NCBI GenBank assembly: GCA_002269645.1
Contig: NIVC01000889.1
Coordinates: 186,001-250,000 of the forward strand
DNA: 64,000 nt
Origin: Macrostomum lignano
Lineage: Eukaryota
Direction of reading: 5' to 3'
This document shows positions 307 through 62,105 of this stretch, in pieces (position 1 is the first letter of the stretch; each line of letters opens with the position of its first letter). The notes below the pieces were generated by a model. That model worked only from the letters and a program-made list of their open reading frames with translations, was not told where the DNA came from and ran no database searches. A program made the translations under genes and the position numbers.

Positions 307-1903
<1,597 letters not shown>

Positions 1904-2618
1904 AAGAGCTGTCACAGATTTCTGGACTCTGTTGTTAGTTTCTGAATTGCGTTTGTATTACTCTACTGTCAGTAGCAATGCCGGAATTAAAGCAGAAAGA
2001 ATTTTACTTTTCTTTGCAAATAATTTTTTCACTATCATCAAAACGGTTTGCCAGATTCCGCTCATTTCGCTGACACCAGAGCACGCGCTCCCACAGGGTG
2101 TACACTCTATGCACCAGGGGGTTTGCACTAGTTGACAAGCCCGGGGCACCGAACTCGAACTCAGGACGCGTCAGACGCTGAGTTACTCCGCCCATCTGAA
2201 AACAAATTCCCGAGGCCCAAGTTTGTCAACTCATCGGCGTTGTCTGTCAGCGGCGGCGCCGTCTGGTGCTCCTCGATCTCAACCTGCAGCGCCTCGGGCA
2301 GGCGCCGGCCGCGCGTCTCCGTCATCAGGCAGAGCGCGGCGGCGGCCGCGGCGAGAGAGAACCCGGCGAACAGCAGGAACGGCAGCGGGCGCCACAGGCT
2401 GCCGAGGGCGGGCAGCAGCGTGCTGGTCAAGACGCCGATCCGAGACACCAGCGAGCCGCTCCCAACTCCGACGCTTCGCAGATCGGTAGGGAAGACCTCA
2501 GCGGCGTACAGGTAGGTGAGGTCGAAGGCCATGTTGATCCAGAACTTGCCAGCCACCGCTGTGCCGACTCGCCAGGCTGTGAGGCCGGGGAAGTCGCTGA
2601 GAACGGCGACCCCGAGCA

Positions 2619-4755
2619 AGTCTGCAAGTCTGGAAGCGGAGAGACGGGTGCGCTGGAACGAATTTCTCTTAGAGAATGGCAACCAGCCTGCCCCGTCCTC
2701 TAGAATCTGGTCCACTCTTAAAAAGCTGACCGGTCGTCCTAACGCGGATAAGAATGTCATTTTAAAGTTTAACGGAAAACAGGCCCTTTCTGGTGCCGAA
2801 ACTGCGGACCGTCTCAACTGTCAGTTCACGAGGCCGCGCCTTCACTGCTCCAACCCGCAGATGCGCGTCGTTCGTCGACGTCTTAAGGGCCTTGCTCGTG
2901 CCGCTGAAGACGCCCCTGTCTTCTCGACTGACGACATCGAAATGGCCATCAAGGGGTCCAAACCCTCCAAGGCCATCGGCCCTGATGGAATCTGCCCGCT
3001 CGTCATTAGGCACTTTGGTCCGAAGGCGAAGGCTGTGCTCCGTAACCTCTTCAATCGCTCAATCGCTTACAATGAGATCCCGGCGGTCTGGAAGAAGTCC
3101 TTAATCTGTCCCCTTCTGAAGGATGGTAAACCGCAGGACGATGGTGCGTCGTATCGCCCTATCTCCTTTCTCTCGCCGCTCGTCAAAATTCTGGAGAAGA
3201 TCCTGCTTCCGCTACTGACTGACCACCTCCAGCTCCCGGCCTGGCAACATGGCTTTCGTCCGCATCACTCCACCGTGACCGCCCTCTGCCAACTGGTTGA
3301 GCAGATCTGCTCAGGTTTTTGTTTGCCAAAACCGCCGGCCAGGACCGGCGTTAGCGCGATCGACCTTCGGATGGCATTCGACTGCGTTGACCACTACGAA
3401 TTACTCTCTGATCTCGCCGAGTCTGATCTTCCTAACACTGTTAAGGCCTGGCTTGCCAACTACATTCTTGGTCGTCAAGCTCGGACCGTCATGCGAGACT
3501 TTAAGTCGAAGTGGCGGCAGGTTCGCATGGGAGTTCCACAGGGCAGCGCCATCAGCCCGCTTCTTTTTGCCTTTTACTTGGCTAAAGCTCCTGTGCCATC
3601 CAATCCGGCCACTAAACTAATTGGTTACGCTGACGATCTTACCGTTGCCGCCTCATCCCCAAACTGTTATTCTATTGAACAACAACTGAACAGCTATCTC
3701 GCTGACCTTGCTCCGTTCCTTGAGTCGCGCAAGCTCCAAATTTCTACATCAAAGTGCTCCTCCACTCTGTTCAGTCCGGATCAGCGCGAGTACTCTCGCC
3801 AACTGAACGTGTCCATCAACGGCTCATTACTACCGCAAGCCCTCTATCCGAAAATTCTTGGTGTGACTTTCGACCCTAAGCTCTCCTTCGCTAGACACGT
3901 TACCACTCTTGCGGAAAAAACCCGGAAAAGGAACTGCCTGCTACGCTGTCTCGCCGGCTCCTCCTGGGGCTGCTGCAAGGAACTTTTGCTGACCACCTTC
4001 AAAGCGTTAGGCAGAAGCCTGCTCGACTATGCTGCTCCGGTCTGGGGCCCTATCATCTCCAACTCGTCCTGGACGCGGCTGCAATCGGTCCAGAATGCAG
4101 CGATTCGCGGGATCACCGGCTGCACTGCCCTTACCTCTGAAGCGGATCTTCATAGTGAAGTCCAGTTGCTTACCGTCCGCCAGCACAACCGACTTCTTTC
4201 GCTCCAGTTCAAGCTTCGCGCTAGACGCCCTGAACTCCCTTGTCACCACCTTTCTGGCCTTCCGCCGCCGCGCAGACTCATGAAAGCCTCCATCTTCACG
4301 GCTGAACACTTTAATGCTGATTGGACGCCGGTTCCGGCCCCGGACGTCCTTGACGCTGCTGCCTGGGATCGCGCCAGGCGGGCCCAGCATACGCAGGCAG
4401 TACAGGCCATGCTGGACAGCCTGCCACAGAACCGTGTTATTCAAACACAACGGCCAGCGATCCATCGCTCCGAAACCTGCCTCCCCCGCCGCATGCGGTG
4501 CATACTGGCGCAGCTCCGCTCCGGTTTCTGCCCGCTTCTCCAGGATTTTCAGTCGAGAATCAAACCAGGCGTCGCCGCGGTCTGTCCTGATTGCGGTCTG
4601 GAGCCCCAAACGGTGGTCCATCTTTTCGACTGCCCTGTCTATCCGACGCCGCTCTGCCCTAGTGACCTTTGGAACAACCCAATTGAGACGTCCACCTTCC
4701 TGGAGTCGACCTTCCTCGGCGGGCTGGGACCCGAGCCGTAGGTTAATACACACAC
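2619..4755 (+). mobile_element. 5'-truncated non-LTR retrotransposon (I/Jockey-group-like RT plus C-terminal Cys/His motif; endonuclease missing)
   Basis: Stop-free ORF to TAG at 4741 with RT motifs YRPISFLS, QHGFRP, IDLRMAFD, GVPQGSAISPLLF, YADD, KILGVTFD and 'CPDCGLEPQTVVHLFDCP'. Short (CA)n tail. 10-bp TSD ACCCCGAGCA at 2609-2618 and 4756-4765. Confidence 0.93.
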
Positions 4756-5540
4756 ACCCCGAGCAGGCAGAGACCGGCCAGGCCGAACGACCCAACAACG
4801 CTTGGGCGACGTCCAAGTCGCAGGCTGACGAAAGCGCAGAACAGGCGCGACGGCGGCTCCACGGCGGCCGAGGCGAGCTGGTTGACGAACACGTTGCCGC
4901 CAAGACGACCGACGCCCAGCGTGACGCCGTAGTAAGCGATGGCGACGGAGAAGAAGAGAAACCAGGAGACCAGGGCGCGTCGCCGCAGGCTCGGCTCTCC
5001 GAGCAGGTTGAAAAAATTTGCCCGCGGCTTCAATCTGGCGTCGCTTTGCTGCTCGGAGAACAGCGCCTCGGTTGAGAAACTCGTCGGCAGCCTTCGCCCA
5101 TTCCGACCGTTGTTGAGCCGGTCGATGCGGCGCAGCACCTGGTCAGCTTCGGCGAACCGACCGACGGAGACGAGCCAGCGTGGCGACTCGCTGAGCAGGA
5201 AGAGGCTGAGCGATAGGACCAGACAGCAGAGACCTGAGCAGAGCAGCTGGTCCTGGTAGTTCCTGAGCAGGTACGCGATGAGGACAACCAGAACGGCCCC
5301 CACCGTGCAGCCGTGGTTCAGATTGAGCCCCCAAACTGTGCGATGCTTTGCATCGGTGAACTCCACCGTGTAGGCCATGGCGCAAGCCGAGATGCCGCTG
5401 TCTCCGTGACCCGCTAGAGCCTGCATGATGCAGTAGAGCCACAGCCAAGGCGCTTGGGAGGCTGCGATGGTGCAGATGGCGATGTTGAGCTGCGAGATCT
5501 GCAATGCGAAATTTGTTACAGTTTTGAGGTGCATAGAAGG

Positions 5541-6071
5541 GCAGAGGTGCAGAGGTGCAGAGGTACACAGGTGCAAAGCTGCAGAGGTGCAGAGGTGCAG
5601 AGGTGCAGAGGTGCAGAGGTGCAGAGGTGCAGAGGTGCAGAGGTGCAGAGGTGCAGAGGTGCAGAGGTGCAGAGGTGCAGAGGTGCAGAGGTGCAGAGGT
5701 GCAGAGGTGCAGAGGTGCAGAGGTGCAGAGGTGCAGAGGTGCAGAGGTGCAGAGGTGCAGAGGTACAGAGGTGCAGAGGTGCAGAGGTGCAGAGGTGCAG
5801 AGGTGCAGAGGTGCAGAGGTGCAGAGGTGCAGAGGTGCAGAGGTGCAGAGGTGCAGAGGTACACAGGTGCAGAGGTGCAGAGGTGCAGAGGTGCAGAGGT
5901 GCAGAGGTGCAGAGGTGCAGAGGTGCAGAGGTGCAGAGGTGCAGAGGTGCAGAGGTGCAGAGGTACACAGGTGCAGAGGTGCAGAGGTGCAGAGGTGCAG
6001 AGGTGCAGAGGTGCAGAGGTACACAGGTGCAGAGGTACACAGGTGCAGAGGTGCAGAGGTGCAGAGGTGCA
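5541..6071. repeat. (GCAGAGGT)n 8-bp minisatellite in the SLC22 intron
   Basis: Direct sequence; lies within intron 6114-5499. Confidence 0.97.
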
Positions 6072-6777
6072 CGGGTGCACATATGAAAGTAATTTCGAAC
6101 TGCCGTTGTCGCACCTGCATGACCCGCAGCCGACCAATTCGATCAGCGAAGCTCCCGTAGACGAGGCACCCAACGATGAAGCCAAGGTAGTAGCAGCTGG
6201 TGGGCAGAGTCGCCAGGAAGGCCCTGTCGCACACCAGCTCAAATCTGGACACCGCCGTCTCCGTGAACAACGCCTCCTCTACTTGTTGGCTCAAATTCTG
6301 ATTCGTACAGTTGACCGGGAGCTGGACAGTGGTGAAGACCGGCGACAATGCAATGGCAACCACGAACACAAACTGACAGATGATCACTAGCAGGGTGAAG
6401 ACATTGTAGCGACCTGTGCCACCGATTCTGCTGAAGACGGCATCCAAGTCTGCCAGCAGTGCAGCATCGGCCAGCTTCTCCTGTTTGTCTTCGGTTTCCA
6501 TCGTGTGCACCATCGATGCGAGACTCGGACAAGTTTCAGGAGTAGAACTCAAGTAACTCCGAAATGACACAACATAGATGTCCGCTGAGTCTGAAGAGCA
6601 CACTCAGTATTGTGCTCACACAGAGGTCACTATGCTGTGCTTTTGCGTTGCCCGAATTGAACCTGTTAGTGCAGAGAGTTCAACAGTTTCTTATCTTTAG
6701 CTAGAAACAGCGGATTTCTCACCTGGCAGACGCGTTGAGGCTTGACTGTCAATAAAGCAGTTGAGGTGAGCTCAAGT

Positions 6778-8242: not shown

Positions 8243-8480
8243 CCCGCCCAGCCCTCGCTCACGTCACTCTGAACTCCGCCCAGTCCTCGCTCACGTCACG
8301 CTGAACTCCGCCCAGTCCTCGCTCACGTCACTCTGAACTCCGCCCAGTCCTCGCTCACGTCACTCTGAACTCCGCCCAGTCCTCGCTCACGTCACTCTGA
8401 ACTCCGCCCAGCCCTCGCTCACGTCACGCTGAACTCCGCCCAGTCCTCGCTCACGTCACGCTGAACTTCGCCCAATCCTC
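8243..8480. repeat. 32-bp tandem repeat (about 7 copies) corresponding to the last codons and stop of the lectin CDS
   Basis: Unit GAACTCCGCCCAGTCCTCGCTCACGTCACTCT, period 32; minus strand reads EDWAEFSVT*. Confidence 0.93.
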
Positions 8481-9188
8481 GCCGTTCTCGATCTCCGACT
8501 CGACCTGAGCGTCGGTGAACAGCAGCAGGCGGCACAGCTTCGACCTCCTGTTGTACAGCGCGCGTCTGCAGTTTTTGTCTCGGCCAGCCGCCGCTACGCA
8601 GCTCACAGAGCTCGGCATCCCGGTCAGGTCTTTGTAGCAGTACTCGGTGCTCGGCTTGTAGCTGGTCCGCTTGAACTCCACTCGCCTCCAGGCGGCCGGC
8701 TGCAGCTTTGCGGCAGGTCGAGTCGCCGGCCGGAACTCGCACAGGTAGCCGCGAGGCCTCTTGCACAGCGAATTGGCGAGGCTGTCAGGATCAGCTCTGC
8801 TCAACATTCTCAAGCAGTCTTGCACTTCTGTGCTCGGCTGGCCCACAAGCCAGAGCGAGTCGTCCTCTGGCAGGTCGCCGTTGTCGTTGACTCGCTGCCA
8901 GCCCGACCTGCTGCGGTGTCGCTCATCGGCCAGGTCGGACACGCCGAGCCACAGCTCCGCACCCGAGGCCAGCCTCTTGATGGAGCTGAGGCTGTTCGCC
9001 AGCTCGCCTCCGAGCGCCGCGCACTGCAGGTTGGCCTCGCACCAGGAGAAGCTTTGGTTGGCGTTCCTGAGCAGGCACGAGTCGGACGAGTTGGAGAACG
9101 GACTCGGGCACAGCGGCTGAGCCTGGGCTGAGCCGAGAAGAGCCAACAAAAGCAGGATTGTCATCCCAAATGTTTTCAGTGTTTGCAT
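8451..9188 (-). CDS. Secreted C-type lectin-domain protein with a possible PAN/apple-like C-terminal module (intronless)
   Basis: Signal peptide 'MTILLLLALLGSAQAQ'. CTLD motifs 'FSWCEANLQCAALGGELA', 'LWLGVSD', 'W..GQP...QDC', 'YLCE'. C-terminal Cys pattern 'SCVAAA...NCRRALY...CRL'. Confidence 0.8.
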   Translation of the reverse strand: MQTLKTFGMTILLLLALLGSAQAQPLCPSPFSNSSDSCLLRNANQSFSWCEANLQCAALGGELANSLSSIKRLASGAELWLGVSDLADERHRSRSGWQRVNDNGDLPEDDSLWLVGQPSTEVQDCLRMLSRADPDSLANSLCKRPRGYLCEFRPATRPAAKLQPAAWRRVEFKRTSYKPSTEYCYKDLTGMPSSVSCVAAAGRDKNCRRALYNRRSKLCRLLLFTDAQVESEIENGEDWAKFSVT

Positions 9189-9690
9189 GGTTTTTTCTGA
9201 CAAGATTTGCTCAGAAGACTGAAATGGGTAAAGAAATTTATTTCAGAGCCAAATTTTTCCAGATTTAGCTATTGGATGTCGCCATCAGGGGGCTGGTTGC
9301 TAGGGCCAACGACCAGGATTTTATGATATAATCAGGAGTTTCATCTAGATTTCAGGGTGAAAACTGATGATTGCATGAGTTTGATCGGCAGCCATCGGTA
9401 GGTGGTGGTTGGGAATGCCCAAAGTTATGATTTGAAGCGCCGGTGAAGGGGATAAACGTCTTTCTGAAATGACAATTACAGGCTTCGCAGGGCAGGAGTT
9501 CAACTTCTCTCTCTGTAAGGCAAGTCAGAAGTGTTTTCCTAGGGGTGGAGCAGCTCACCGGTAAACGCGCCAGACTCTTGCGCCACAAGAATTTTGGCTT
9601 GTGCACAAAAACTGGCCAGGGGGTTGTGGTGCCATCAAACCCATGAGGGCCAGCCCCTGTGGCACAGAGAGTGTACATGCCTGTTCCAAA

Positions 9691-22190: not shown

Positions 22191-24368
22191 GCCTGCCTGC
22201 CTGTCTGTCTCTGCCTGCCTGCCTGCCTGCCTGTCTGTCTGTCTCTGCCTGCCTGCCTGCCTGCCTGTCTGTATCTGCCTGCCTGCCTGTCTGTCTGTCT
22301 CTGCCTGTCCGTCTGTCTGTCCGTCTGTCTGTCCTAGATTCTGTCCGCCTGTCTTAGCCCCAGCCGCAGGCCGGCACCCACCTGAACAATCCCACCCGCC
22401 AGTCCCGAGCCTGCACAGCAAAGTATGACGTCATCGGCGCCAGCGGACCCCCGGAGCACCAGGCCGGCGGCTGGCCGTAGCCGCGCAGGCTGTAGTTGCG
22501 CGCCAGGGCGAGCGCCAAGAGGCCCGGCTCCGGCGGCTGCCCCTCCGCGGAGGCAGTCCAGCAGAAGGAGAGGCCCATCGCCAGCTGGTGCGCCAGGAAC
22601 CCGGAGCAGGCAGCGGCCGACAGGGCACCGGAGCGGAGCGCCACCTGATTGGTGATGGTGGATTGAATGCATTGCGAGCTGGGATGCCATGGAGATGGAA
22701 AGGTTCGGGTGAACTGGGGAGATTGGGGAATCACAGGGGAATGAGATTGGGGAATCACAGGGGAATGAGATTGGGGAATCACAGGGGAATGGGATTGGGG
22801 AATCACAGGAGAATGGGATTGGGGAATCACAGAGGAATGGGATTGGGGAATCACAGAGGGAATGAGATTGGGGAATCACAGGGGAATGATATTTGGGAAT
22901 CACAGGGGAATGGGAAGATTGGGAAAAGGGGAATATAAAACACGGAAAAGTGGATGAATTGTTACAAAATGGGAAGGTTTGTGGGAAGATGAGTCGGTAA
23001 ACACCCAGAGCAATGCCCTAGCCATACCCCGGTACTCACCATGACGATTTCCTGCCAGCGTCGCCGTCGCCAATTAGTTGCTATGGCAACGCAGGCCGGG
23101 GCGGCAACCAGCAGAGCGTTGGCCAGCCCGTTGGACCGAGCGAGTCCAGCAGCGGCCAGAGCCAGGCCAGCCTCCAGATGCTGGCCCCGCCGCAGGCAGG
23201 ACAGAGCCCACAGGCTGCACAGCAGGTGGGCGGGCTCAGAATAGAAGGCCACAAAGAAGGGAGTGGCAGGTGACACGGACAGCAGGGTCAGAGCGGCCAG
23301 GCGAAGGCCGGGCCGGCCAGGATAATACAGCTCAGTCAGGTGCCAGAACAGGTGGACGCACAACAGGTGCAAACAAAAATTAACGCAATAACAAGCCAAC
23401 AGAGTGACAGTTGTTTCTGTTGCTAGGCAACCGTATTGTTGGTTGCTAAGCAGTAGGATTAGAGGAAATCTAACGGCCCGGCAGAGCATGGGGTAGAGTG
23501 GAAAGAACACGACAGAATGATCGATGACGTAACCTCGACGGGCGATGAGGACAAAGTGCACGGAGTCCCAGCGGTGGTAGCCGTCCAGAAGGAGGCGCAG
23601 GACCCAGCCGACTGGACTGGGCTCTGGCTGCTGTTCCTCGACCGACTGAGGCTCGTAGTCGGCCAGCTTGAAGGCGCCGGCATTGTGATCCGGGATGAAG
23701 TGGGAGACCGCCTGTGCGGGACGAAACAGAATGGCAGTAGTGTGGGTAAAAGGCAGGAGTAAATGAACTATATTTTGATGCGTCACTGCCTCGGCATCTA
23801 ATTAGCAATTGCTTTAATACAGTAAGAATGTATTTATTTTAGCATCCTAAAAAGATTCTATGTTCTATAATATTCATAAAGACAAAATTTGACAGGTATG
23901 CTTTTTAGCGCTAACTCAGAGGTTGGCAAACTTTTTTATTCAAATGGCAAGATAAATAATCCAGCTAATGGCTGTGGGCCAGATAAGAGGAGAGGGGAGA
24001 GATAAGAGGGAAGAGAGGAGCGGAGAGAAAGGAAAGGTGAGAGAGGAGAGGTAAGAGAAGGGAGATGAGAGAGGAGAGGGCTGAGAAAGGGGGAGGTGAG
24101 GACAGGGGAGAGAGGAGGGGAGAGGTAAGAGAGAAAAGCTGAGAAGAGGCACAAACTCTGAGCAGACCGGACTGCTATTTTGAAGTTTCAAGGGACCCAA
24201 GGGCCAGATAGAGGCTTAGTAGACTAGAGTTTGCCAACCCAAGCTAACTGAAGGCTTAAAAGATATAATTATAATTATAGTTAGCAAATTTACCTGAATT
24301 GCCAAGGATACAAATCGAACAAAAATGATTAAATGAAATTTTCTTGGCACTTTGGAGAGCAATGACAT
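21589..24368 (-). CDS. PIGV: GPI mannosyltransferase 2
   Basis: Exons 24368-24294, 23711-23040, 22644-22382 and 22036-21589 (GT-AG, in phase). Motifs 'IPDHNAGAF', 'RWDSVHFVLIARRGY...FFPLYP', 'FYSEP', 'RSNG', 'PNFLLAAP', terminal 'HANFLPWT*'. Confidence 0.92.
22146..22345. repeat. (CTGT)/(CTGC) compound microsatellite in PIGV intron 3
   Basis: Direct sequence. Confidence 0.93.
22717..22921. repeat. 24-bp tandem repeat (GATTGGGGAATCACAGGGGAATGA) in PIGV intron 2
   Basis: Period 24, about 8 copies. Confidence 0.92.
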
Positions 24369-31423: not shown

Positions 31424-34400
31424 ATGTCGAGCGACGTTGAGCCGATCGATAAAGTAGGAAAAGTTTCTACTCCATCAAATACGGCCAGTCAAGGTAATAA
31501 AAGTGCATTACCAATGATTGCAGTTGCGTTAAAATTATAGGCTGTATTGCTTCCAACCCGGACAATGTATTTAGAAATCCTTAATGGTAGCCATGCAGTG
31601 CTGCCTCCTGTGAAAACGCACGTTGTATCAACAGTATGTTTGATTTTCCCTCTGTGTATTCGGTTCTGACGAGAGAGAGAAGAGAACGGAGGGGAGAACA
31701 GAAGAGGAGAGAGGAGAGGTGAGAGGGGAGGAGAGTGGAGAGGAAAAGAGCAAGATAGTGCCAGGCAGACAAAGGAGGGAAAGGAGTAAGTGGCATATAC
31801 AATGCAAGGACATATGCAGCAATGCTAAAAATGCGTAAAATTGCCAAGGGTTTGCCGGCTCCCTTGGGTTAAATGGTTCTTCAAAGACCTACTGTAACTG
31901 CATTGCATCTACGCGAGCGACTTAGTCGAGACAGTTTTGGCAGTTACCAATTCTTCTGCGCCAAATATTCAGTTCTCATAATTAAACATGCAAAATGAAT
32001 CTGTACGCTTGCTTTGCTTGTTAAACCAGAGCCTCTGTGCTATGGCACGCAGCAGGGAGCGAGTGTTGCTATTCGAAAGAAAGCAGGGTATTGTTCCACA
32101 ATTCGCATGGATACATGCATGAATGTGTGTGTAGTCAAGCAGTTTTGCCACAAGCCAGCGAAAGTATATATATATATGATTGTGAATAAGATGAAAGCAG
32201 AGACAAACAGACTAAGCTAGTGTTAACTCGAGTGAATCTATAGAATGACGGAGGCTGCAGAAGCTCCAGAAGATTTCGCCCTTGTTGAAGAGTCCTTAGA
32301 ATTGCTGAGTGAGACATGACTGCTGCCTTAAATTTAATCATTCGTACAATGCGATATTAGAGTTGAATTGCACGTAACTTCTCATTGTTTACTTGTCAAT
32401 ACCCTCTGACAGAAAAGTGCAGGTCAGTGTTTCAACTGTTCAACCGGGGCTCGGACAGCATGCTCACCAGAGACCTCGGGTCCGCTCTGCGCGCTCTGGG
32501 CCAGATACCCAGCGATCAGGAGGTGGAGATGATCGCCTCAAAGCTGGAGCAGGATGACATCTATGACAAAGGTTCGGGCTTATCTTGTTGGCTCTCTCTG
32601 TTTTGTTCAGACAGTGTGAAATGAATATTCCCTGGAGGGCTGTATAGGCACCTTGACGCAACGATTTTTTAGGATACACAAAAATCTCCTTTGACGACTT
32701 TCATCGTGTTGTACAAGAGAATTGCGAGAGAAAAGACGACATCAGAGAAATGGTTCTCGACTCGTTTAGGGTGAGTCTTGGTCAGTCAGTCAGTCAGTCA
32801 GTCAGTCAGTCAGTCAGTCAGTCAGTCAGTCAGTCAGTCAGTCAGTCAGTCAGTCAGTCAGTCAGTCAGTCAGTCAGTCAGTCAGTCAGTCAGTCAGTCA
32901 GTCAGTCAGTCAGTCAGTCAGTCAGTCAGTCAGTCAGTCAGTCAGTCAGTCAGTCAGTCAGTCAGTCAGTCAGTCAGTCAGTCAGTCAGTCAGTCAGTCA
33001 GTCAGTCAGTCAGTCAGTCAGTCAGTCAGTCAGTCAGTCAGTCAGTCAGTCAGTCAGTCAGTCAGTCAGTCAGTCAGTCAGTCAGTCAGTCAGTCAGTCA
33101 GTCAGTCAGTCAGTCAGTCAGTCAGTCAGTCAGTCAGTCAGTCAGTCAGTCAGTCAGTCAGTCAGTCAGTCAGTCAGTCAGTCAGTCAGTCAGTCAGTCA
33201 GTCAGTCAGTCAGTCAGTCAGTCAGTCAGTCAGTCAGTCAGTCAGTCAGTCAGTCAGTCAGTCAGTCAGTCAGTCAGTCAGTCAGTCAGTCAGTCAGTCA
33301 GTCAGTCAGTCAGTCAGTCAGTCAGTCAGTCAGTCAGTCAGTCAGTCAGTCAGTCAGTCAGTCAGTCAGTCAGTCAGTCAGTCAGTCAGTCAGTCAGTCA
33401 GTCAGTCAGTCAGTCAGTCAGTCAGTCAGTCAGTCAGTCAGTCAGTCAGTCAGTCAGTCAGTCAGTCAGTCAGTCAGTCAGTCAGTCAGTCAGTCAGTCA
33501 GTCAGTCAGTCAGTCAGTCAGTCAGTCAGTCAGTCAGTCAGTCAGTCAGTCAGTCAGTCAGTCAGTCAGTCAGTCAGTCAGTCAGTCAGTCAGTCAGTCA
33601 GTCAGTCAGTCAGTCAGTCAGTCAGTCAGTCAGTCAGTCAGTCAGTCAGTCAGTCAGTCAGTCAGTCAGTCAGTCAGTCAGTCAGTCAGTCAGTCAGTCA
33701 GTCAGTCAGTCAGTCAGTCAGTCAGTCAGTCAGTCAGTCAGTCAGTCAGTCAGTCAGTCAGTCAGTCAGTCAGTCAGTCAGTCAGTCAGTCAGTCAGTCA
33801 GTCAGTCAGTCAGTCAGTCAGTCAGTCAGTCAGTCAGTCAGTCAGTCAGTCAGTCAGTCAGTCAGTCAGTCAGTCAGTCAGTCAGTCAGTCAGTCAGTCA
33901 GTCAGTCAGTCAGTCAGTCAGTCAGTCAGTCAGTCAGTCAGTCAGTCAGTCAGTCAGTCAGTCAGTCAGTCAGTCAGTCAGTCAGTCAGTCAGTCAGTCA
34001 GTCAGTCAGTCAGTCAGTCAGTCAGTCAGTCAGTCAGTCAGTCAGTCAGTCAGTCAGTCAGTCAGTCAGTCAGTCAGTCAGTCAGTCAGTCAGTCAGTCA
34101 GTCAGTCAGTCAGTCAGTCAGTCAGTCAGTCAGTCAGTCAGTCAGTCAGTCAGTCAGTCAGTCAGTCAGTCAGTCAGTCAGTCAGTCAGTCAGTCAGTCA
34201 GTCAGTCAGTCAGTCAGTCAGTCAGTCAGTCAGTCAGTCAGTCAGTCAGTCAGTCAGTCAGTCAGTCAGTCAGTCAGTCAGTCAGTCAGTCAGTCAGTCA
34301 GTCAGTCAGTCAGTCAGTCAGTCAGTCAGTCAGTCAGTCAGTCAGTCAGTCAGTCAGTCAGTCAGTCAGTCAGTCAGTCAGTCAGTCAGTCAGTCAGTCA

Positions 34401-34799
34401 GTCAGTCAGTCAGTCAGTCAGTCAGTCATCCCAACTCCAGGCCATGGATCTCAAAGCCAGCGGTCTGGTGGACGCCGCCCAGCTCTCATCGCTGCTCACT
34501 GGCTCAGGTGAGGCATTGACTCAAGCGGAGATGAAGGAGCTGCTTCAGGAAGCTGGAGTTAACAAGGACGGAAAGATTGACTACTCAAGTGAGACGGAAT
34601 TTCTGAATATAGCTCGTTTGCTAAGAAGATGTTTGACAACATTCAATCTACTACTCACAAAATACGAATTTCAGGATTCGTTGAGCAGCTGCTGCAGTTT
34701 GAAATGGCTCAGGCTGCCGCTCCCGCTGCAAAGAAAGAGACGGCAGATGAGGCCAAGCCGAAAGAGAACAAGAAGGCCAAGGGCAAGAAGAAAAAATGA
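31424..34799 (+). CDS. Calmodulin/myosin-light-chain-like EF-hand protein with a Lys-rich tail
   Basis: Exons 31424-31493 (least certain), 32413-32571, 32673-32770, 34441-34588 and 34675-34799, in phase. Motifs 'RSVFQLFN', 'LGSALRALGQIPSDQEV', 'ISFDDF', 'GEALTQAEMKELL', 'NKDGKIDY', C-terminal 'KKAKGKKKK*'. Confidence 0.85.
32781..34427. repeat. Perfect (GTCA)n array of about 1.65 kb forming nearly all of intron 3 of the EF-hand gene
   Basis: Donor at 32771, acceptor at 34440. Confidence 0.98.
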
Positions 34800-35559: not shown

Positions 35560-36670
35560 AAATCTCTTCAATGCACACAAATGGTGAGTTGTTGTCTCCC
35601 AAATACTTTTTGCCCACTTTGGAGTTGATTACCTGGAAATTATCTGAGTATCATGGAGGAGTTGGTTAGAATCCAGTTTTACCTAAAATACATGTAGTAC
35701 AACTGAGAGTGTAAATTCCTTATCAGATTTATTTTTAACAGTGAGTCACAGTGAGAAGAGTCGGAGTCGGCTAGCAGCACAAGTCCCGAGACCGATCCTT
35801 AAAAAACGCTGAAAAAAGGTTCTCGTAAATGTCTGAACAAGTATCCAAGTTGTTTAATAATAAATGGAGCTCCCTGGTGAGCTCAGGGTGTAAGCGACGC
35901 TGCAGTGCTGATGAACAAAACAATGACACAGCTACGGGGGGTCCGACGAAGAATCTATTATAGAGTTTCATAAGTGTGTAGGCATTAATCCAAACACACA
36001 CGCTGGCGCTGTATAAACAGACAGAGAGGTTTAGGCTAAGCGCTAAGCCTATAACTATTATAGCGCGCGGTGAAAGTGGAAGAGATGCCAAGTTTTTAAA
36101 CCGAAGAATCTGCAGGCAGAGTGAGCGAGCGGGAGAGTGAGTAAGAGAAAATAGAGATGCTGGACTTATGGCTCATTTCCGACGTGCCACACCGCCTTTC
36201 ATTTTACCGGGGGGGGGAGGCACAATAGCGAGAGAGCGCGGAATCGTCCCCACCAAAATGAGCTTGTCACTCAAGCGGTGCAGCCAACACTTTCACTCGG
36301 CTCTGGGCTTTTAAGGACGAAAGAGGAGGCTACACGGAGTCGGACTGGGGGAGGGGGAGAGGCAGAGGGAGACAGACAGACACACGGCGAGCTTACAAGC
36401 GACTGCAGCCCGTTAGACAGTTGGGTCGGGCGGCCCGGTTCTATCTGAAGTATAAGAGAAGAGAAGAATGCACGACCCCCCCCCCCCCCTGCAGCCCCAG
36501 TTTTACTGTGGAATAGATAAGAGAGGCCTAAGCTCTGCCAGAATAAAAGAGTAGTTTCGGGCTAGTTGAGGACCTGTCCTAATAGGTCTAAGCCAAAAGC
36601 CGTTATAAATGTACCTGTGCAGATCCAGCTGATTAAAAAGGACGTCGAAGAAGCGTTGAAGAAATTCAGC

Positions 36671-37843
36671 ATGCAGGCAGCAGCAACAACAGCGGCGGCG
36701 GATGCACTGCTGATGCTACTCTTTGTGCTGCTAGCAACACGTTCAGCTGGAGTGCAGCTGCCGCCGAATCAAGCTGACGAAGCTCAAGCAGTTGTGAGGT
36801 ACGAGAAAGGCGACTGCATCTACGAGACCATCGCCTGTCTGTACGACGACAGCTGCGGGCCGCTGCTCCGCACGGTGTACGCCTACTGTTACGAGACTGA
36901 CGGCTATCTCCGAGATCGGCCGGACGGGTCCAGGCTGCAATGCGACTCCTCCTGCTCGGTGCTCCTGTCGCTGTTATTCAACACTACTGGCGGAGCCCGC
37001 CTGACTCAGTGCAACTACAGCGGCAACGAGTTCTGGACTCAGATCGTCATACACAAGCGGCGAGCCTGCGCCGGCCTGCTGGAGAAAACCGACGCCTTGC
37101 TGCGACGCGAGCTGGATGGAGAAATCCGAACTGATTGCTGGCTGGCTGGGCTGCTGTGCGCCAAGGACTTCGCCTGCCGGTCGACTCTCACAGCCGTGCT
37201 GGACCTGCCGTGCTACGACGGACCCTGCAGCCAGGACTGCGCCGCTCGGCTCAGCAACTTTGCTAAAGACTTTGGCCACATTTTCCACACATTCCTGAGC
37301 TGCTTGTGCGGCCCGGACCTGGCAGCCGCCTGTCCTCAACCAGTGCCTGGTGATTACCTTGGCAACCGAAGCGCCGCACTGGACCAAGTTGCATTTGTAT
37401 CGCCACTGGACGGTCTGATGACTCAGCTGGGCAGGGGCGCCATCCGCGAGCACATGCGAGACATTGTCTGGCTGCTGAAGGTGTTCGAACATCCGTTCTA
37501 CTGTCGCAGCATGAAGACAATCATCAGCGAAGCAACCTGCCTGCCGCCGGTGAGCAGACAGCCTACAGTCGATGAGCCGCTTTGCACCATTGAGCCGATG
37601 TACGAACTGCCAGAAACTACAACTGTTGCTAACCAGCTCACCACCGATGCCAGTTCTCAGCAAGCTGTCCCCAGCTCAGATCCAACGACAACTGTTGAGC
37701 AACCTTACACTGACAAACCGAAGAGTGCCTCTGCCGACTCAGCGACTCCAGTTGCCAGCGCCTGCGGCAGATTCCGCACAGACTGGGAAACTTCCAATCT
37801 AATCACAGTCAGCGTTTTGATATTTTTGACAACGAAGTTTTAG
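36671..37843 (+). CDS. GAS1/GDNF-receptor-alpha-like Cys-rich surface protein, probably GPI-anchored (intronless)
   Basis: Signal peptide; two Cys modules ('IACLYDDSCGPLL...CDSSC', 'LLCAKDFACRSTL...CSQDC...CLC'); Thr/Ser/Pro-rich stalk; hydrophobic C-terminus 'NLITVSVLIFLTTKF'. Confidence 0.7.
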   Translation: MQAAATTAAADALLMLLFVLLATRSAGVQLPPNQADEAQAVVRYEKGDCIYETIACLYDDSCGPLLRTVYAYCYETDGYLRDRPDGSRLQCDSSCSVLLSLLFNTTGGARLTQCNYSGNEFWTQIVIHKRRACAGLLEKTDALLRRELDGEIRTDCWLAGLLCAKDFACRSTLTAVLDLPCYDGPCSQDCAARLSNFAKDFGHIFHTFLSCLCGPDLAAACPQPVPGDYLGNRSAALDQVAFVSPLDGLMTQLGRGAIREHMRDIVWLLKVFEHPFYCRSMKTIISEATCLPPVSRQPTVDEPLCTIEPMYELPETTTVANQLTTDASSQQAVPSSDPTTTVEQPYTDKPKSASADSATPVASACGRFRTDWETSNLITVSVLIFLTTKF

Positions 37844-38062
37844 AAAGAATTGCACTTCGCGTTTGACATTTAAATATAACACTATTTTTACTATCAATGC
37901 TACTTGAAGTACTTTGCCGAGCATTTTGAAATGTCTGACTCTCGCGCCAAATAAGCCATGCGCAAACACATTGATTTGGGGCTTGTGTGCATGATAATTA
38001 TCCATGAGGGTTGCCGTGCGATTCACAGCCATCAGGGCTGACCATCTAGGAACAGAGTGTAC

Positions 38063-38698
38063 ACTCACTCACTCACTCACTCACTCACTCACTCACTCAC
38101 TCACTCACTCACTCACTCACTCACTCACTCACTCACTCACTCACTCACTCACTCACTCACTCACTCACTCACTCACTCACTCACTCACTCACTCACTCAC
38201 TCACTCACTCACTCACTCACTCACTCACTCACTCACTCACTCACTCACTCACTCACTCACTCACTCACTCACTCACTCACTCACTCACTCACTCACTCAC
38301 TCACTCACTCACTCACTCACTCACTCACTCACTCACTCACTCACTCACTCACTCACTCACTCACTCACTCACTCACTCACTCACTCACTCACTCACTCAC
38401 TCACTCACTCACTCACTCACTCACTCACTCACTCACTCACTCACTCACTCACTCACTCACTCACTCACTCACTCACTCACTCACTCACTCACTCACTCAC
38501 TCACTCACTCACTCACTCACTCACTCACTCACTCACTCACTCACTCACTCACTCACTCACTCACTCACTCACTCACTCACTCACTCACTCACTCACTCAC
38601 TCACTCACTCACTCACTCACTCACTCACTCACTCACTCACTCACTCACTCACTCACTCACTCACTCACTCACTCACTCACTCACTCACTCACTCACTC
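38063..38698. repeat. Perfect (ACTC)n microsatellite
   Basis: Direct sequence; followed by AATAAA at about 38709. Confidence 0.98.
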
Positions 38699-38994: not shown

Positions 38995-39636
38995 ATGGGC
39001 ATCGGCTCCAGCAGCGAAGCCCGAAGCCGCGTCATCATGATTGGCCTCGACTCGGCTGGCAAGACCACTCTACTGTACAAGCTGAAAAGTGGCGAAGTCA
39101 GCACATCGATTCCCACTATCGGGTTCAACGTTGAGACACTGAGCCTCAGTCGGAGCACCCAGCTAGTCAGCTGGGATGTTGGCGGACGCTGTTCGCTGAG
39201 ACCTCTGTGGCGGCACTACTTCAAAGACGCCCAAGGCCTGATATTTGTAGTTGACAGCTCCGATAGAGATCGGATGCACGAAGCGGCAGACGAGTTGGCT
39301 CGACTACTCGAACACGACGAGCTCGCTGGCTGCCCGCTGCTGGTGCTGGCCAACAAGAAGGACCTGCCGAGTGCCATGCCGCTGGCTGAGCTGACGGAGA
39401 GGCTGAGCGTGCCCCGTCTGCGTCTCAACCGGCCATTCCGGATGTTCGCCATCAGTGCAAGTAACTTTGATGGCGTTGCGGGAGCGTTCGACTGGCTGGC
39501 CAGAGAGGTGAAACGCCGCCTTCCAGGCTCCAAGGATAAAGCTCAAGAAGCATTGGGCAGCCATGGCAACGGCAAAATTCTACAGCTGACCGAGAGTCTG
39601 CTGCCGAAAGGGCTGCAGAAATTGCTGTTCTCCTAG
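38995..39636 (+). CDS. ARF/ARL-family small GTPase, divergent and intronless
   Basis: MG start, G1 'GLDSAGKTT', switch I '[10 protein letters not shown]', G3 'WDVGGR', 'LRPLWRHYF', G4 'NKKD'. Confidence 0.92.
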
Positions 39637-43295: not shown

Positions 43296-48922
<5,627 letters not shown>

Positions 48923-52533: not shown

Positions 52534-54874
52534 CGCTCGCACGGGCGTATTCAGCATGCCAGTGAAGTATGAGACAGACCAGGCCTATGGGCTAGGGTCT
52601 GCGATCCTCCACGCCTGCCCCTATCTTCAGCAGGTAAAGGCTGGTGGGACGTCTGCACCCTCTATTTACCGCTGGCAGCCGCAGACCCCCCTCACGCTGT
52701 CTCGCAAGCCGACCCAGGGTACCCGTCCCCGCGAGTGTTTAAGTCAGGCCCTAGGGCTGCCGGACTGTCTGGGCTCCGGCGCTGGGGACCCATCCAGTGG
52801 CTTTTGCCGTACTTGGGTATGCAGATCTGGCTCGCCAGTCCGCAGGCCGTGGTACTGCTCAACGTACCCTCTAACGCCTTAAGGTGTTCGACCGTGCCGA
52901 CGGGCTGGAAGGCCGGGGAGTAGTCCGGTCGCAAGCGGTCCCCCTCCTGGTGTCGGGCCAGCCTTGAGGGTTCTTTTGGCCTACTGCCCGGTCAGGTGGA
53001 GCGGCCGGGTGGGTACCGCACCCCTTCGAGGGTAGCCCACCAACCTTTATCATGGCCTTCGAGCCGACTATGGATAAACAAGCTATTTCTAGGGACGGGG
53101 ACCCTTCTAAACCCCAACCTCAGTCCGACGGACCGGACGGCCCTGCTGGCAGATCCCAACCGACTGATTCAACTGTGGCAAAGGAAGGACCGGCTGGCTC
53201 TGCTGGCAGATCCGACCAGAGCTACCAAACTCAAAATACCCAAAGACCTGCCAGCTCTGCTGGTGGATCTAAGGGAACCGCGAGCTCTGAGCCTAAAGGA
53301 CCGGCCAAATCTGGCAGATCCGACGAAGCTCAGCGGGCTCGGCTTGAGCGCAAACGCGCTAAGCAACGCGCCAAAAGGCAGGCCAAGAAGGGAGCTGCGG
53401 GGGCCAAAGCGGCGGCGTCCACCATGGATGCTGAAGCGACTGGCGTCCCAAGGCAACCAGACGGGCCGGCCGGTGGAAGCTCCAGTAGTTCAGCGGCGGC
53501 GCTCCCTGGAGATGCTGCTGCGGCTGCTGAGGCCGAAACCACGGCGCAACATATGGCCACTGCCAACAAGGAGGTTCCTTCGGGAGCTACCTTTGCGGCG
53601 AAGGCCAAGGCCAAAATCTCGGGAGTGATCATCCAAGGTCGCGACCAGGACTGGACCACTGATCCGCTTCAAAAAGTGTGGAGTGCTGTTGACTCCTATC
53701 TGATTGAGCTGACTGTCGAGGAGGGAATCTCCATCGGCATTGAGCAGATGGTGCTGCAAAGCACATTCGCTCTTATTGCTTCTACATGTAGCAGTGAGGA
53801 GGACGCTCAGCAGCTGCTCCAGCGGCTACCGACGGTCTCCTTGGATGCTGACCTCGGCGGAGCCCTTTTTCTTCGTGAAGGCCGGCGTCCAAAGACAATA
53901 CCCTACGTGGTTTTTGTCCCTGCAAAGAGCACCGCAGCTGGACCAGACGTTGTCCTCTGGGTCCTACTGCGCCTGAATCCCGACCTCCCTGTTAGTGGAC
54001 TGGTGTATCACCGCAATGTCCGCAGGGGGAGACGGGCAAGTCAATTTTCCTCGGCCTTTCCAACGTTTGGGCGAGTCGGTCCCTAACCTAGGGAAACGGA
54101 TCCTTTTTCCAGCTGGGTGCCCTCAAGCTCAAGATGCGCCGAGGAAAGTCTGCCAAAGGGAAGGCTGCTGCCAACCCCGGCATCTCCGGCAAGAGCGGAG
54201 CGCAGTCTAAGGCCCAAGGAAAGGCGCAAGCCGATCCCAAATCCAGAGCTGCGTCTCGCCCCTCTGCTAGCAGCAATTCGGCGACCCCGGTGACGGCTCC
54301 GGCCAAGCCCCGGGAACCGAACCTGCCAGCCGGAGAAGGAGTTGAGGACGAGGCCGGGTCTTCGGAATCCGAGCTCTCCTCGGCCACCATTTTGCATGCA
54401 GTCAGTTTCTTTAGACAAATAGACACGGTTCACTGGTGGGGTCTGAAGACAAAGATGCAGATGAGGAAGCTTCCTCCATCCTGTCATCGGAGCCTGAGGA
54501 CTCTGCTGGGGGGAGGGGGGGCTGGTGGGGGTGAGGAGGCCATGGACGTCGACCAACTCCCATCTCCCAGTCAAGCCCCAACGGCCTGGGACGAGTACAA
54601 TTTGCTGTCCAAGTCTCCTTGATGGCCCGGGGCTCTAGCCAGACATTGCATTTAATACAGTATGACTAAGCTCCACGCTGCCAAAGGAGCGACATTCTGT
54701 CTGCAAATAAATTTACAGCATTGCGTATCTGCGTCAGTAAATCTGATGAAGATTGCTGAGCTGTACAGGCCAGGCCTCATTCTGATCCAGGAACTCTGGA
54801 CAGCTCTTATTGCTCCATCTCGGCATCCCTCGCCACCTCTGCCGTTCCTGGGATTCGCGGTTTTGTATGTCTGA
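52534..54874 (+). mobile_element. 5' half of a degenerate non-LTR retrotransposon (R1/LOA-like ORF1 and start of APE endonuclease), 3'-truncated
   Basis: About 500-nt GC-rich UTR. ORF1 53052-54622 is broken by a frameshift near 54025 and a stop at 54089 ('ATFAAKAK', 'LLRLNPDL'). ORF2 remnant 'LQINLQHCVSAS...GLILIQELW' is a typical APE N-terminus. Confidence 0.75.

Positions 54875-57394: not shown

Positions 57395-61177
<3,783 letters not shown>

Positions 61178-61439: not shown

Positions 61440-62105
<666 letters not shown>

What the first reader, a model, noticed from the sequence alone, without database searches (positions are those of the whole stretch)
2609..4765. LINE inserted antisense into an SLC22 coding exon carries splice signals that could remove it in frame (candidate retrotransposon-to-intron event)
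Seen: a 10-bp TSD (ACCCCGAGCA) brackets the element, and removing it restores ...GLCLLG-VAVLSDF...GKFW...YAAEVFPT. The RT ORF has no stops, which suggests a recent insertion. On the host (minus) strand the (CA)n tail reads GTGTGTGTGTATT, giving GT donors at 4757, 4755, 4753, 4751 and 4749; GTGTGT is also the donor of the GPCR intron at 955. The element's truncated 5' end reads CCCGTCTCTCCGCTTCCAG| (acceptor 2630) with a second CAG| at 2622. Donor 4755 or 4749 with acceptor 2630, or donor 4753 with acceptor 2622, keeps the frame and adds only a few residues (e.g. LLG-VLAD-LLGV). Inference: the gene may stay functional through intronisation. Unspliced, it stops at TAA 4743 and loses its C-terminal helices.
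Basis: partly seen in the sequence, partly recalled or inferred. Interest (0 to 1): 0.8.

Follow-up and report, generated by a model that had tools for sequence, protein, structure and literature searches.

The report
LINE insertion interrupting a flatworm transporter gene
A recently inserted, 5'-truncated LINE retrotransposon sits backwards inside a coding exon of an SLC22-type transporter gene of the flatworm Macrostomum lignano; it has splice-like signals at both ends, but nothing yet shows that it is spliced out, so it is most likely an ordinary gene-disrupting insertion.

Summary
A 2,137-nt non-LTR retrotransposon fragment (2619-4755, + strand) lies antisense in exon 2 of a minus-strand SLC22-family gene of Macrostomum lignano. 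It has an open 706-codon RT frame, no endonuclease domain and a short (CA)4 tail, and a perfect 10-bp target-site duplication flanks it. Deleting it restores one open frame that is colinear with paralogues and with human OAT1.

The intronisation reading is untested and weaker than stated.
- In-frame pairing is guaranteed. The (GT)n tail offers all three phases, and the host frame stays open for 200 nt into the element.
- None of the tail donors matches the species' GT[G/A]AG motif.
- The antisense element holds 4 consensus GTAAG donors and 9 further internal YTNCAG acceptors that would compete.

In favour, acceptor 2630 has the best pyrimidine tract of 206 AGs, and three YTNCAG acceptors cluster in the terminal 35 nt. 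The only public gene model of the locus reads into the LINE instead of skipping it.

Most likely this is a recent disrupting insertion in a redundant gene family of a duplicated genome. RNA-seq would decide.

The parts
2609..2618 (.). Left copy of the 10-bp target-site duplication ACCCCGAGCA. On the host strand it is part of codons L-L-G-V.
   Evidence: Exact 10-mer found only here and at 4756-4765 in the window.
2619..4755 (+). 5'-truncated non-LTR (LINE) retrotransposon, 2,137 nt, antisense to the host gene.
   Evidence: RVT_1 E=8e-30. Relatives are 1,000-1,200 aa with an added Exo_endo_phos endonuclease domain that is missing here. PDB hits are R2 and L1 ORF2p. There is no second copy in the window.
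2621..4741 (+). Open RT reading frame of the element: 706 codons plus TAG. RVT_1 domain at 3146-3862, YADD at 3626-3637, CX2CX9HX4C at 4583-4633.
4742..4755 (+). 14-nt 3' end of the element, GTTAATA(CA)3C. On the host strand it reads as the (GT)n run.
   Evidence: The closest relative, P0014, likewise ends with a stop codon followed by G(CAA)6.
4756..4765 (.). Right copy of the TSD.
6115..6501 (-). Host SLC22-like gene, exon 1 (ATG METEDK... to ...RLRVMQ, donor CAG|GTGCGA).
5499..6114 (-). Host intron 1 (inferred), filled by the minisatellite (GCAGAGGT)67.
   Evidence: The public model P0001 starts exactly at the acceptor (ISQLNI...).
4756..5498 (-). Host exon 2, the part upstream of the insertion (ISQLNI... 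to ...GLCLLG-V).
   Evidence: 100% identical to P0001.
2161..2618 (-). Host exon 2, the part downstream of the insertion (end of TM9, TM10-TM12, C-terminus; stop at 2163-2161). Still an intact open frame.
4743..4745 (-). Premature stop (TAA) met by the unspliced host frame, four codons into the element (..GVCVY*).
4748..4757 (-). Cluster of five candidate GT donors (G at 4757, 4755, 4753, 4751, 4749; phases 0, 2, 1, 0, 2). Only 4757 has G at -1. None matches GTRAG.
2622..2658 (-). Cluster of three YTNCAG candidate acceptors. Their AG ends at 2653 (needs phase 0), 2630 (phase 2, best pyrimidine tract of 206 AGs) and 2622 (phase 1).
2619..2634 (+). 8-nt near-duplicate AGTCTGCA|AGTCTGGA at the 5' junction of the element. 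It creates the acceptor at 2622.
4007..4757 (-). Path of the public automated gene model A0A1I8HLU0: a 34-nt 'intron' 4757-4724, then a 238-codon antisense-LINE frame to the stop at 4007.

Best explanation
A non-LTR retrotransposon integrated by target-primed reverse transcription into the codons for the end of transmembrane helix 9 of an SLC22-family transporter gene of Macrostomum lignano.

How it arose:
- The nick on the host-sense strand lay after ...TGCTCGGGGT, whose terminal GT can pair with the element's (AC)n RNA tail.
- Reverse transcription stopped, or switched template, in the linker before the RT domain. The copy therefore lacks ORF1, the promoter and the endonuclease, and was dead on arrival.
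- Repair left a 10-bp TSD.
- The event is recent: identical TSD copies and 706 open codons.

What it does:
- As the DNA stands, the host frame stops four codons into the element and loses TM10-12.
- The most likely functional outcome is a null or severely reduced allele. This would be tolerated because the family is expanded (tandem paralogues) and the genome was recently duplicated.
- Transcripts are probably a mixture of read-through and heterogeneous cryptic splicing between the (GU)n tail, internal GTAAG/YTNCAG sites and the terminal acceptor cluster.
- A minority of such products may be in frame.

Shown here: the structure, the insertion, the frames and the motif audit. Inferred: the TPRT details, recency and the functional outcome.
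For: Structure and family:
- TSD and exact frame restoration.
- RT domain without an endonuclease domain, compared with full-length relatives.
- The microsatellite tail is a family trait.
- Colinearity with paralogues and with OAT1 across the junction.
- Premature stop.

Splice audit:
- Donors are non-consensus for the species.
- The best donor is out of frame with two of the three terminal acceptors.
- There are 4 internal GTAAG donors and 9 more internal YTNCAG acceptors. The total of 12 is twice the shuffle expectation of 5.9 +/- 2.3.
- An ATTAAA lies on the host strand at 4315.

Genome and database context:
- SLC22 paralogues sit in a tandem array.
- M. lignano is a hidden polyploid: the DV1 assembly has 180 Mb of non-repetitive blocks at least 95% identical, and the species shows an excess of paralogues.
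- The only public gene model of the locus does not skip the element.
- No spliced or empty-site protein exists among 5.8 billion database proteins.
Against: - Acceptor 2630 has the best pyrimidine tract of 206 AGs. Three YTNCAG motifs fall in the last 35 nt, where about 0.1-0.2 would be expected. About 5% of shuffles put even one within 15 nt of the end. Survivorship of a splice-competent insertion would produce this pattern.
- The best donor, 4757, pairs in frame with 2653.
- A 2.1-kb intron is a normal size for this species.
- Real local introns use weak signals, including GTGTGT.
- No intact empty-site copy of this gene was found in the public protein sets. If that is true of the genome, the insertion allele may be the only copy.
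- Absence from the NCBI annotation is uninformative, because transcripts overlapping repeats were filtered out.
Confidence: 0.62

Rival explanations
1. Intronisation. The whole element is removed as a new ~2.1-kb spliceosomal intron, from a (GU)n donor in the antisense tail to one of the three terminal acceptors. The result is a transporter with 5, 7, 9 or 14 extra residues at the extracellular end of TM9 that still works.
For: - In-frame, stop-free products exist for 4757+2653, 4755/4749+2630 and 4753+2622.
- Acceptor 2630 has the top-ranked pyrimidine tract of 206 AGs. The three terminal acceptors all match the species' YTNCAG motif, as does the real intron-1 acceptor TTGCAG.
- A CTAAG branch-like motif lies 16 nt upstream of AG 2653 and 39 nt upstream of AG 2630.
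- GTGTGT is used by the neighbouring inferred intron.
- The mean intron length is 1.1-1.4 kb.
- The insertion point lies 3-4 residues before a loop whose length varies between OAT1 and this protein.
- Precedents exist: the 412 element in vermilion, Tc1, Ds, ONSEN.
Against: - There is no RNA evidence.
- In-frame pairing is guaranteed by (GT)n, so it is not evidence.
- A random donor x terminal-acceptor pairing is in frame only about one time in three.
- Donors are non-consensus, and three of the four in-frame donor choices have T at -1.
- Nine other YTNCAG acceptors and four GTAAG donors lie inside the element.
- The public gene model found no such isoform.
- Real local acceptors have poor pyrimidine tracts, so tract strength may not drive site choice in this species.
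Confidence: 0.2
2. The terminal acceptor cluster is used for spliced-leader trans-splicing or for internal exonisation rather than for clean removal. Possible products are an SL-capped RNA encoding only the last ~150 residues, or chimeric mRNAs carrying antisense-LINE exons (for example an exon bounded by acceptor 4700 and donor 4173).
For: - 30-39% of M. lignano genes are SL trans-spliced.
- The SL acceptor motif [T/C]TNCAG is matched by 2653, 2630 and 2622.
- An acceptor without a good upstream cis donor is the known requirement for trans-splicing. The SL itself ends in ATG.
- Consensus donors and acceptors lie inside the element.
Against: This is purely motif-based. SL acceptors normally sit near 5' ends of genes or in operons. 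No transcript data are available.
Confidence: 0.1
3. The public gene model is right: a 34-nt micro-intron (4757-4724) joins the transporter to a 238-residue protein read from the antisense strand of the LINE.
For: UniProt A0A1I8HLU0 (P0001) has exactly this structure. The antisense frame is open for 298 codons.
Against: - The antisense frame has no homologue other than the model itself.
- It would replace TM10-12 with an Arg-rich, non-membrane sequence.
- The model also lacks exon 1, as expected of an ab initio call that dodges a stop codon.
- Long open antisense frames are expected in 56% GC sequence.
Confidence: 0.03
4. Assembly artefact: the LINE is not really in this gene.
For: The genome is highly repetitive and hard to assemble.
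Against: - A perfect TSD with exact frame restoration is the signature of a real retrotransposition event, not of a chimeric join.
- The same insertion is present in the sequence behind P0001, which differs at two codons. That assembly, however, shares PacBio reads with Mlig_3_7.
Confidence: 0.03

Closest known systems
Retrotransposon 412 in an exon of Drosophila vermilion, spliced from the pre-mRNA (Fridell, Pret & Searles 1990; cited)
   Same: A retrotransposon lies antisense in a coding or exonic region. Cryptic donor and acceptor sites at or near the element's ends allow it to be removed as an intron. The upstream 5' splice-site context matters.
   Different: 412 is an LTR element, and its splicing was shown by RNA analysis and is imprecise and inefficient. 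Here the element is a truncated LINE, and splicing is only predicted.
Splicing of DNA transposons out of exons: Tc1 in C. elegans (Rushforth & Anderson 1996), Ds in maize (Giroux et al. 1994); references listed
   Same: An exonic TE insertion is partly rescued by cryptic splice sites in or beside the element, sometimes in frame.
   Different: Those are DNA transposons with terminal inverted repeats, shown experimentally. This is a LINE, with no data.
Introner elements / transposon-derived introns (review PMC11282704)
   Same: Splice signals are supplied by the element and by the TSD or flanking exon. The TSD sits at the exon-intron junctions.
   Different: Introners are short, mostly DNA-transposon-like families that create hundreds to thousands of similar introns. 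Here there is one 2.1-kb LINE copy, no family-wide evidence, and an acceptor that depends on an accidental truncation point.
ONSEN intronisation in Arabidopsis (PMC12112155)
   Same: A full-length retrotransposon inserted in an exon was spliced out as a new intron soon after insertion.
   Different: A plant LTR element, documented with long-read cDNA. Most exonic insertions in that study gave truncated transcripts instead.
Antisense LINE-1 effects on host transcripts in mammals (for example PMC3192792)
   Same: The antisense strand of a LINE is rich in cryptic splice acceptors and poly(A) signals that perturb host transcripts. Here there are 12 YTNCAG sites against 5.9 expected.
   Different: Those cases are intronic L1s causing exonisation or premature termination. 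This is an exonic insertion of a different LINE clade.
Non-LTR retrotransposons with an APE endonuclease, RT and C-terminal Cys-His motif and with simple-repeat tails (Jockey/CR1/I/R1 supergroup; from general knowledge)
   Same: The closest relatives have the architecture Exo_endo_phos + RVT_1. There is a C-terminal CX2CX9HX4C motif, and a stop codon followed almost directly by a microsatellite tail.
   Different: The best database relative is only 42% identical and the clade was not resolved. R1-clade elements that target (AC)n repeats (Mino) are a lead recalled from memory, not tested.

Membership tests
Non-LTR (LINE) retrotransposon insertion made by target-primed reverse transcription | Reverse transcriptase of the non-LTR type | tested here: met
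   RVT_1 E=8e-30 with YADD. PDB best hits are R2 (2e-11) and L1 ORF2p (2.5e-4). 128 relatives at E<=1e-10; of the 120 listed, most of the full-length ones carry Exo_endo_phos + RVT_1.
Non-LTR (LINE) retrotransposon insertion made by target-primed reverse transcription | Target-site duplication flanking the insert; 3' end complete with a tail; variable 5' truncation | tested here: met
   10/10 TSD. The 3' end is stop + 14 nt ending in (CA)n, matching the stop + (CAA)6 of relative P0014. The endonuclease domain and everything upstream are absent.
Non-LTR (LINE) retrotransposon insertion made by target-primed reverse transcription | Multiple dispersed copies of the same family in the genome | not testable with these tools
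   There is one copy in the window and none in L001. No M. lignano genome search is available. No M. lignano protein of this family is in the database.
SLC22 (organic ion transporter) family of the major facilitator superfamily | Full-length sequence similarity to SLC22 members, stronger than to other MFS families | tested here: met
   SLC22A6 1e-52, SLC22A3 9e-49, SLC22A12 4e-48 and OCT1/2 1e-39 to 1e-44 over residues 76-486. By contrast GlcP scores 2e-9 and SV2B 7e-8. Pfam Sugar_tr and MFS_1.
SLC22 (organic ion transporter) family of the major facilitator superfamily | Large extracellular loop between TM1 and TM2 | tested here: not met
   The loop is about 60 residues shorter than in the three M. 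lignano paralogues. The similarity to solved SLC22 proteins starts only after it, at residue 76. This makes it a divergent SLC22-like member, best called 'SLC22-family/SLC22-like'.
Transposon-derived spliceosomal intron (intronised TE) | Canonical GT...AG boundaries at or near the element's ends | tested here: met
   Five GT in the tail. Three YTNCAG within 35 nt of the other end.
Transposon-derived spliceosomal intron (intronised TE) | Removal preserves the reading frame | tested here: inconclusive
   It is possible for 4 specific donor/acceptor pairings among the terminal sites and impossible for the others. The possibility is guaranteed by (GT)n.
Transposon-derived spliceosomal intron (intronised TE) | Spliced mRNA observed (junction reads or cDNA) | not testable with these tools
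   No transcript data are reachable. No spliced product was found in the protein database. The public model does not skip the element.
Introner-type element family | Many near-identical copies that each form an intron | not testable with these tools
   Only a single copy was seen.

The most novel reading that the evidence does not exclude
This LINE lineage carries a built-in 5' splice-site cluster on the antisense strand of its microsatellite tail, (CA)n read as (GU)n. Antisense exonic copies that happen to be truncated at an acceptor-rich stretch are spliced out in frame. In that case LINEs, not only DNA-transposon 'introners', would be creating new introns in a flatworm, and this locus would be an intron caught at birth.
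Probability: 0.08. Interest if true: 0.7.

Novelty: new member of a known kind. Interest (0 to 1): 0.3.

Why it matters
If junction reads showed in-frame removal, this would be a dated, sequence-resolved case of an intron born from a LINE in an animal. The TSD, the donor (the element's own tail) and the acceptor (set by the truncation point) would all be identifiable. Most documented recent intron gains instead involve DNA-transposon-like introners.

As it stands, it is one more young retrotransposon insertion disrupting a member of an expanded transporter family in a repeat-rich, recently duplicated genome.

Its practical value is modest:
- It flags a mis-predicted public gene model, A0A1I8HLU0, which is a chimera of transporter and antisense LINE.
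- It shows that this LINE lineage was active recently in M. lignano.

Tried and rejected
1. Looked for other copies of the element or of the SLC22 gene in the window by blastn/tblastn. None found. The repeat finder was swamped by microsatellites.
2. Tried to reach the same locus in annotated assemblies.
   - Exact look-ups of P0001, the lectin-like ORF and the Arf-like ORF were not on record.
   - A homology search with the neighbouring GPCR found nothing.
   - So neither transcript-based gene calls nor an empty-site copy could be inspected.
3. The absence of this gene from the NCBI proteins first looked like evidence of non-expression. I rejected that, because the Mlig_3_7 submission dropped transcripts overlapping repeat annotations.
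4. Unconstrained U1 duplex energies ranked 4755 nearly as high as 4757. That is a register-slip artefact on a (GT)n run, so I replaced it with fixed-register counts.
5. Considered intron size as an argument against splicing. Rejected, because the mean intron length is 1.1-1.4 kb.
6. Considered pyrimidine-tract strength as decisive. I played it down, because three real or inferred local acceptors have weak tracts.
7. Wasik et al. 2015 (PMC4603488) is not held.
8. The LINE clade could not be resolved. The best relatives are unnamed metagenome or assembly proteins at no more than 43-44% identity.
9. L001 (the paralogue array) carries no copy of the element.
Full report
**Organism and locus**

The reconstructed host protein matches UniRef A0A1I8HLU0 of Macrostomum lignano at 100% identity over exon 2. 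Three M. lignano paralogues match at about 41%. The window is therefore from this free-living flatworm. Its genome is more than half repetitive, with 15% simple or tandem repeats. It was recently duplicated, and the sequenced DV1 line has 180 Mb of non-repetitive blocks that are at least 95% identical.

**Checking the observation**

The 10-mer ACCCCGAGCA occurs only at 2609-2618 and 4756-4765, and the match does not extend on either side. Between the two copies lie 2,137 nt (2619-4755). The + strand frame 2621-4738 is open for 706 codons and ends at TAG 4739-4741. It contains an RVT_1 domain (E=8e-30) with YADD intact, and a C-terminal CX2CX9HX4C motif.

The closest database proteins are only 42-44% identical. 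When full length, they are 1,000-1,200 residues long and carry an Exo_endo_phos endonuclease domain ahead of the RT. That domain and everything upstream are missing here, so the copy is 5'-truncated and cannot move by itself. Solved-structure hits are R2 and LINE-1 ORF2p.

After the stop codon there are only 14 nt, GTTAATA(CA)3C. The closest relative, P0014, ends in the same style: a stop codon followed by G(CAA)6. A minimal 3'UTR plus a short microsatellite tail is therefore a trait of this group.

**The host gene (minus strand)**

- Exon 1 is 6501-6115, with donor CAG|GTGCGA.
- Intron 1 is 6114-5499 and is almost entirely a (GCAGAGGT)67 minisatellite.
- Exon 2 starts at 5498.
- Removing the insert and one TSD copy gives an uninterrupted frame of 525 codons.
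- That frame aligns without any gap at the junction to the paralogues.
- It also aligns to human SLC22A6/OAT1 (E=1e-52), followed by SLC22A3, SLC22A12 and OCT1/2. Other MFS families score far worse.
- The junction, ...GLAGLCLLG|VAVLSDF..., falls at the outer end of TM9, just before a loop of variable length.
- The TM1-TM2 loop is much shorter than in the paralogues, so 'SLC22-like' is the safest label.
- Unspliced, the frame reads ...CLLGVCVY and stops at TAA 4745-4743, losing TM10-12.

**The splice-signal audit**

This coincidence carries no weight, however. GT every 2 nt gives phases 0, 2, 1, 0, 2. The host frame is open from 2818 downwards. So all 15 AGs in the last 200 nt of the antisense element yield a stop-free product with a restored C-terminus for at least one tail donor.

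*Donors.*
- Published analysis of 187,627 M. lignano cis junctions finds GT[G/A]AG at about 65% of donors (PMC8629364).
- None of the five tail donors matches it. They read GTGTG, GTGTA or GTATT.
- In fixed register to U1, 4757 (GGG|GTGTGT) makes 5 Watson-Crick and 2 wobble pairs.
- 4755 and 4753 make 4+2. 4751 and 4749 make 3+2 and 3+1.
- The two local introns make 6+1.
- All three real or inferred local donors have A at -2 and G at -1: CAG|GTGCGA, AAG|GTGTGT, and CAG|GTAGGA in paralogue P0003, which is a transcript-based model.
- Only 4757 has G at -1.

*Acceptors.*
- AG 2630 is preceded by 14 pyrimidines in 17 positions, the best of all 206 AGs in the element.
- The real local acceptors have only 9-10 of 17.
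- The P0003 intron has an A-rich 3' end...ACTAATTTAG.
- Acceptors 2630 and 2622 both match the species' YTNCAG motif, as does the real intron-1 acceptor TTGCAG.
- I found a third YTNCAG at 2653, 16 nt downstream of a CTAAG branch-like motif. It needs phase 0.
- The best donor 4757 therefore pairs in frame with 2653 and adds 14 residues, RTRLSASRLADLLG.
- Three YTNCAG motifs within 35 nt is unusual. The whole element has 12, against 5.9 +/- 2.3 in dinucleotide shuffles. Only about 5% of shuffles put even one within 15 nt of the end.
- Two of the three exist because of an 8-nt near-duplication at the 5' junction, AGTCTGCA|AGTCTGGA.

*Competitors.*
- The antisense element also contains four consensus GTAAG donors (4173, 4134, 3642, 3070).
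- It contains nine further YTNCAG acceptors (4700, 4598, 4137, 4079, 3973, 3191, 3116, 3088, 2904).
- An ATTAAA lies at 4315 on the host strand.
- Clean removal of the whole 2.1 kb would have to ignore all of these.
- Intron size is not an obstacle, since the mean intron length is 1.1-1.4 kb.

**Independent evidence**

None is decisive.
- The only public model of the locus is A0A1I8HLU0 (P0001). It starts at exon 2 and leaves the exon at the 4757 donor. It then jumps a 34-nt 'intron' to CAG 4724 and reads 238 codons of the antisense LINE to a stop at 4007.
- This looks like an ab initio path around the stop codon. At the least, the pipeline had no evidence for a LINE-skipping isoform.
- The model differs from the window at two codons inside the LINE (4475-4477 and 4109-4111). 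The same insertion therefore exists in a second assembly or copy. The differences could be polishing differences.
- No empty-site, spliced or truncated product of this gene is present among 5.8 billion proteins.
- Attempts to reach the locus through its neighbours failed.

**Interpretation**

The shown facts are a recent TPRT insertion of a dead-on-arrival LINE into TM9 codons of an SLC22-like gene, and a premature stop in the unspliced message.

The most probable consequence is loss or strong reduction of function of this copy. This would be tolerated by redundancy: the paralogues form a tandem array and the genome is duplicated. Heterogeneous cryptic splicing would accompany it. I put this at about 0.6.

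Genuine intronisation giving a working transporter is possible. The terminal acceptor cluster and the 4757+2653 pair make it somewhat more credible. I put it at about 0.2.

Because 30-39% of genes in this species are SL trans-spliced at YTNCAG acceptors, and the SL ends in ATG, trans-splicing or LINE exonisation at these sites is a further alternative, at about 0.1.

**Comparison with what is known**

Removal of exonic TEs by cryptic splicing is long established:
- the 412 retrotransposon in Drosophila vermilion, Tc1 in C. elegans and Ds in maize (references);
- an exonic ONSEN insertion in Arabidopsis;
- introner families that create introns en masse, reviewed in PMC11282704.

Antisense LINEs are known sources of cryptic acceptors. 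This locus would be a new example of a known kind, notable only if RNA data show precise in-frame removal. The test is simple and uses existing public data.

Noticed in passing
window 955-1549 and 5499-6114: Both inferred introns next to the finding consist almost entirely of tandem repeats: (GACA)140 in the GPCR intron and (GCAGAGGT)67 in SLC22 intron 1. Both introns use non-GTRAG donors (GTGTGT, GTGCGA).
   Followed up: partly
window 45017-48232, 58152-59556, 32781-34428, 38062-38698, 61442-62100: There are very long tetranucleotide arrays: (CTAA)805, its inverted counterpart (TAGT)351, (GTCA)412, (CACT)159 and (GACA)167. More than 40 tandem arrays score >=200 in 64 kb.
   Followed up: no
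window 2619-2634: An 8-nt near-duplicate, AGTCTGCA|AGTCTGGA, lies exactly at the 5' junction of the LINE. It may be filler or a template-switch product, and it creates the second CAG acceptor.
   Followed up: partly
window 4007-4903 (minus strand): A 298-codon open frame runs antisense to the LINE. The public UniProt model A0A1I8HLU0 reads it through a 34-nt 'intron', so the model is a transporter/antisense-LINE chimera and also lacks exon 1.
   Followed up: yes
window 310-954 + 1550-1903 (+): These are the 3' exons of a rhodopsin-type GPCR (7tm_1, E=1.6e-7) with Gly-rich runs in the third loop. The gene is convergent with the SLC22 gene, with only 257 nt between the two stop codons. No relative at E<=1e-20 was found among 5.8 billion proteins.
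   Followed up: partly
window 8451-9203 (-), 38995-39636 (+), 22962-23786 (-): Other genes in the window are a secreted C-type-lectin-like ORF, an Arf/Arl-family GTPase (Arf, E=8e-57) and a PIG-V mannosyltransferase fragment. The lectin-like and Arf-like ORFs, looked up by exact sequence, are not on record in the contig collection.
   Followed up: partly
L001 10001-21749 (NIVC01000896.1): SLC22-like paralogues form a tandem array. One is intronless (P0002). One has a single 77-nt A-rich intron, CAG|GTAGGA...TTTAG|G (P0003), at a position different from intron 1 of the window gene.
   Followed up: partly
L002/L003 5161-5182: The closest relative of the LINE (42% aa identity, unnamed ENA assemblies) is also 5'-truncated (720 aa, RT only). 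It ends with a stop codon followed by G(CAA)6. The same locus appears in two samples.
   Followed up: partly
window 53052-54086 (+), 36566-37843 (+), 48269-48922 (+): These are long ORFs with no Pfam match. 53052-54086 is Lys/Arg/Ala-rich and could be TE-derived.
   Followed up: no
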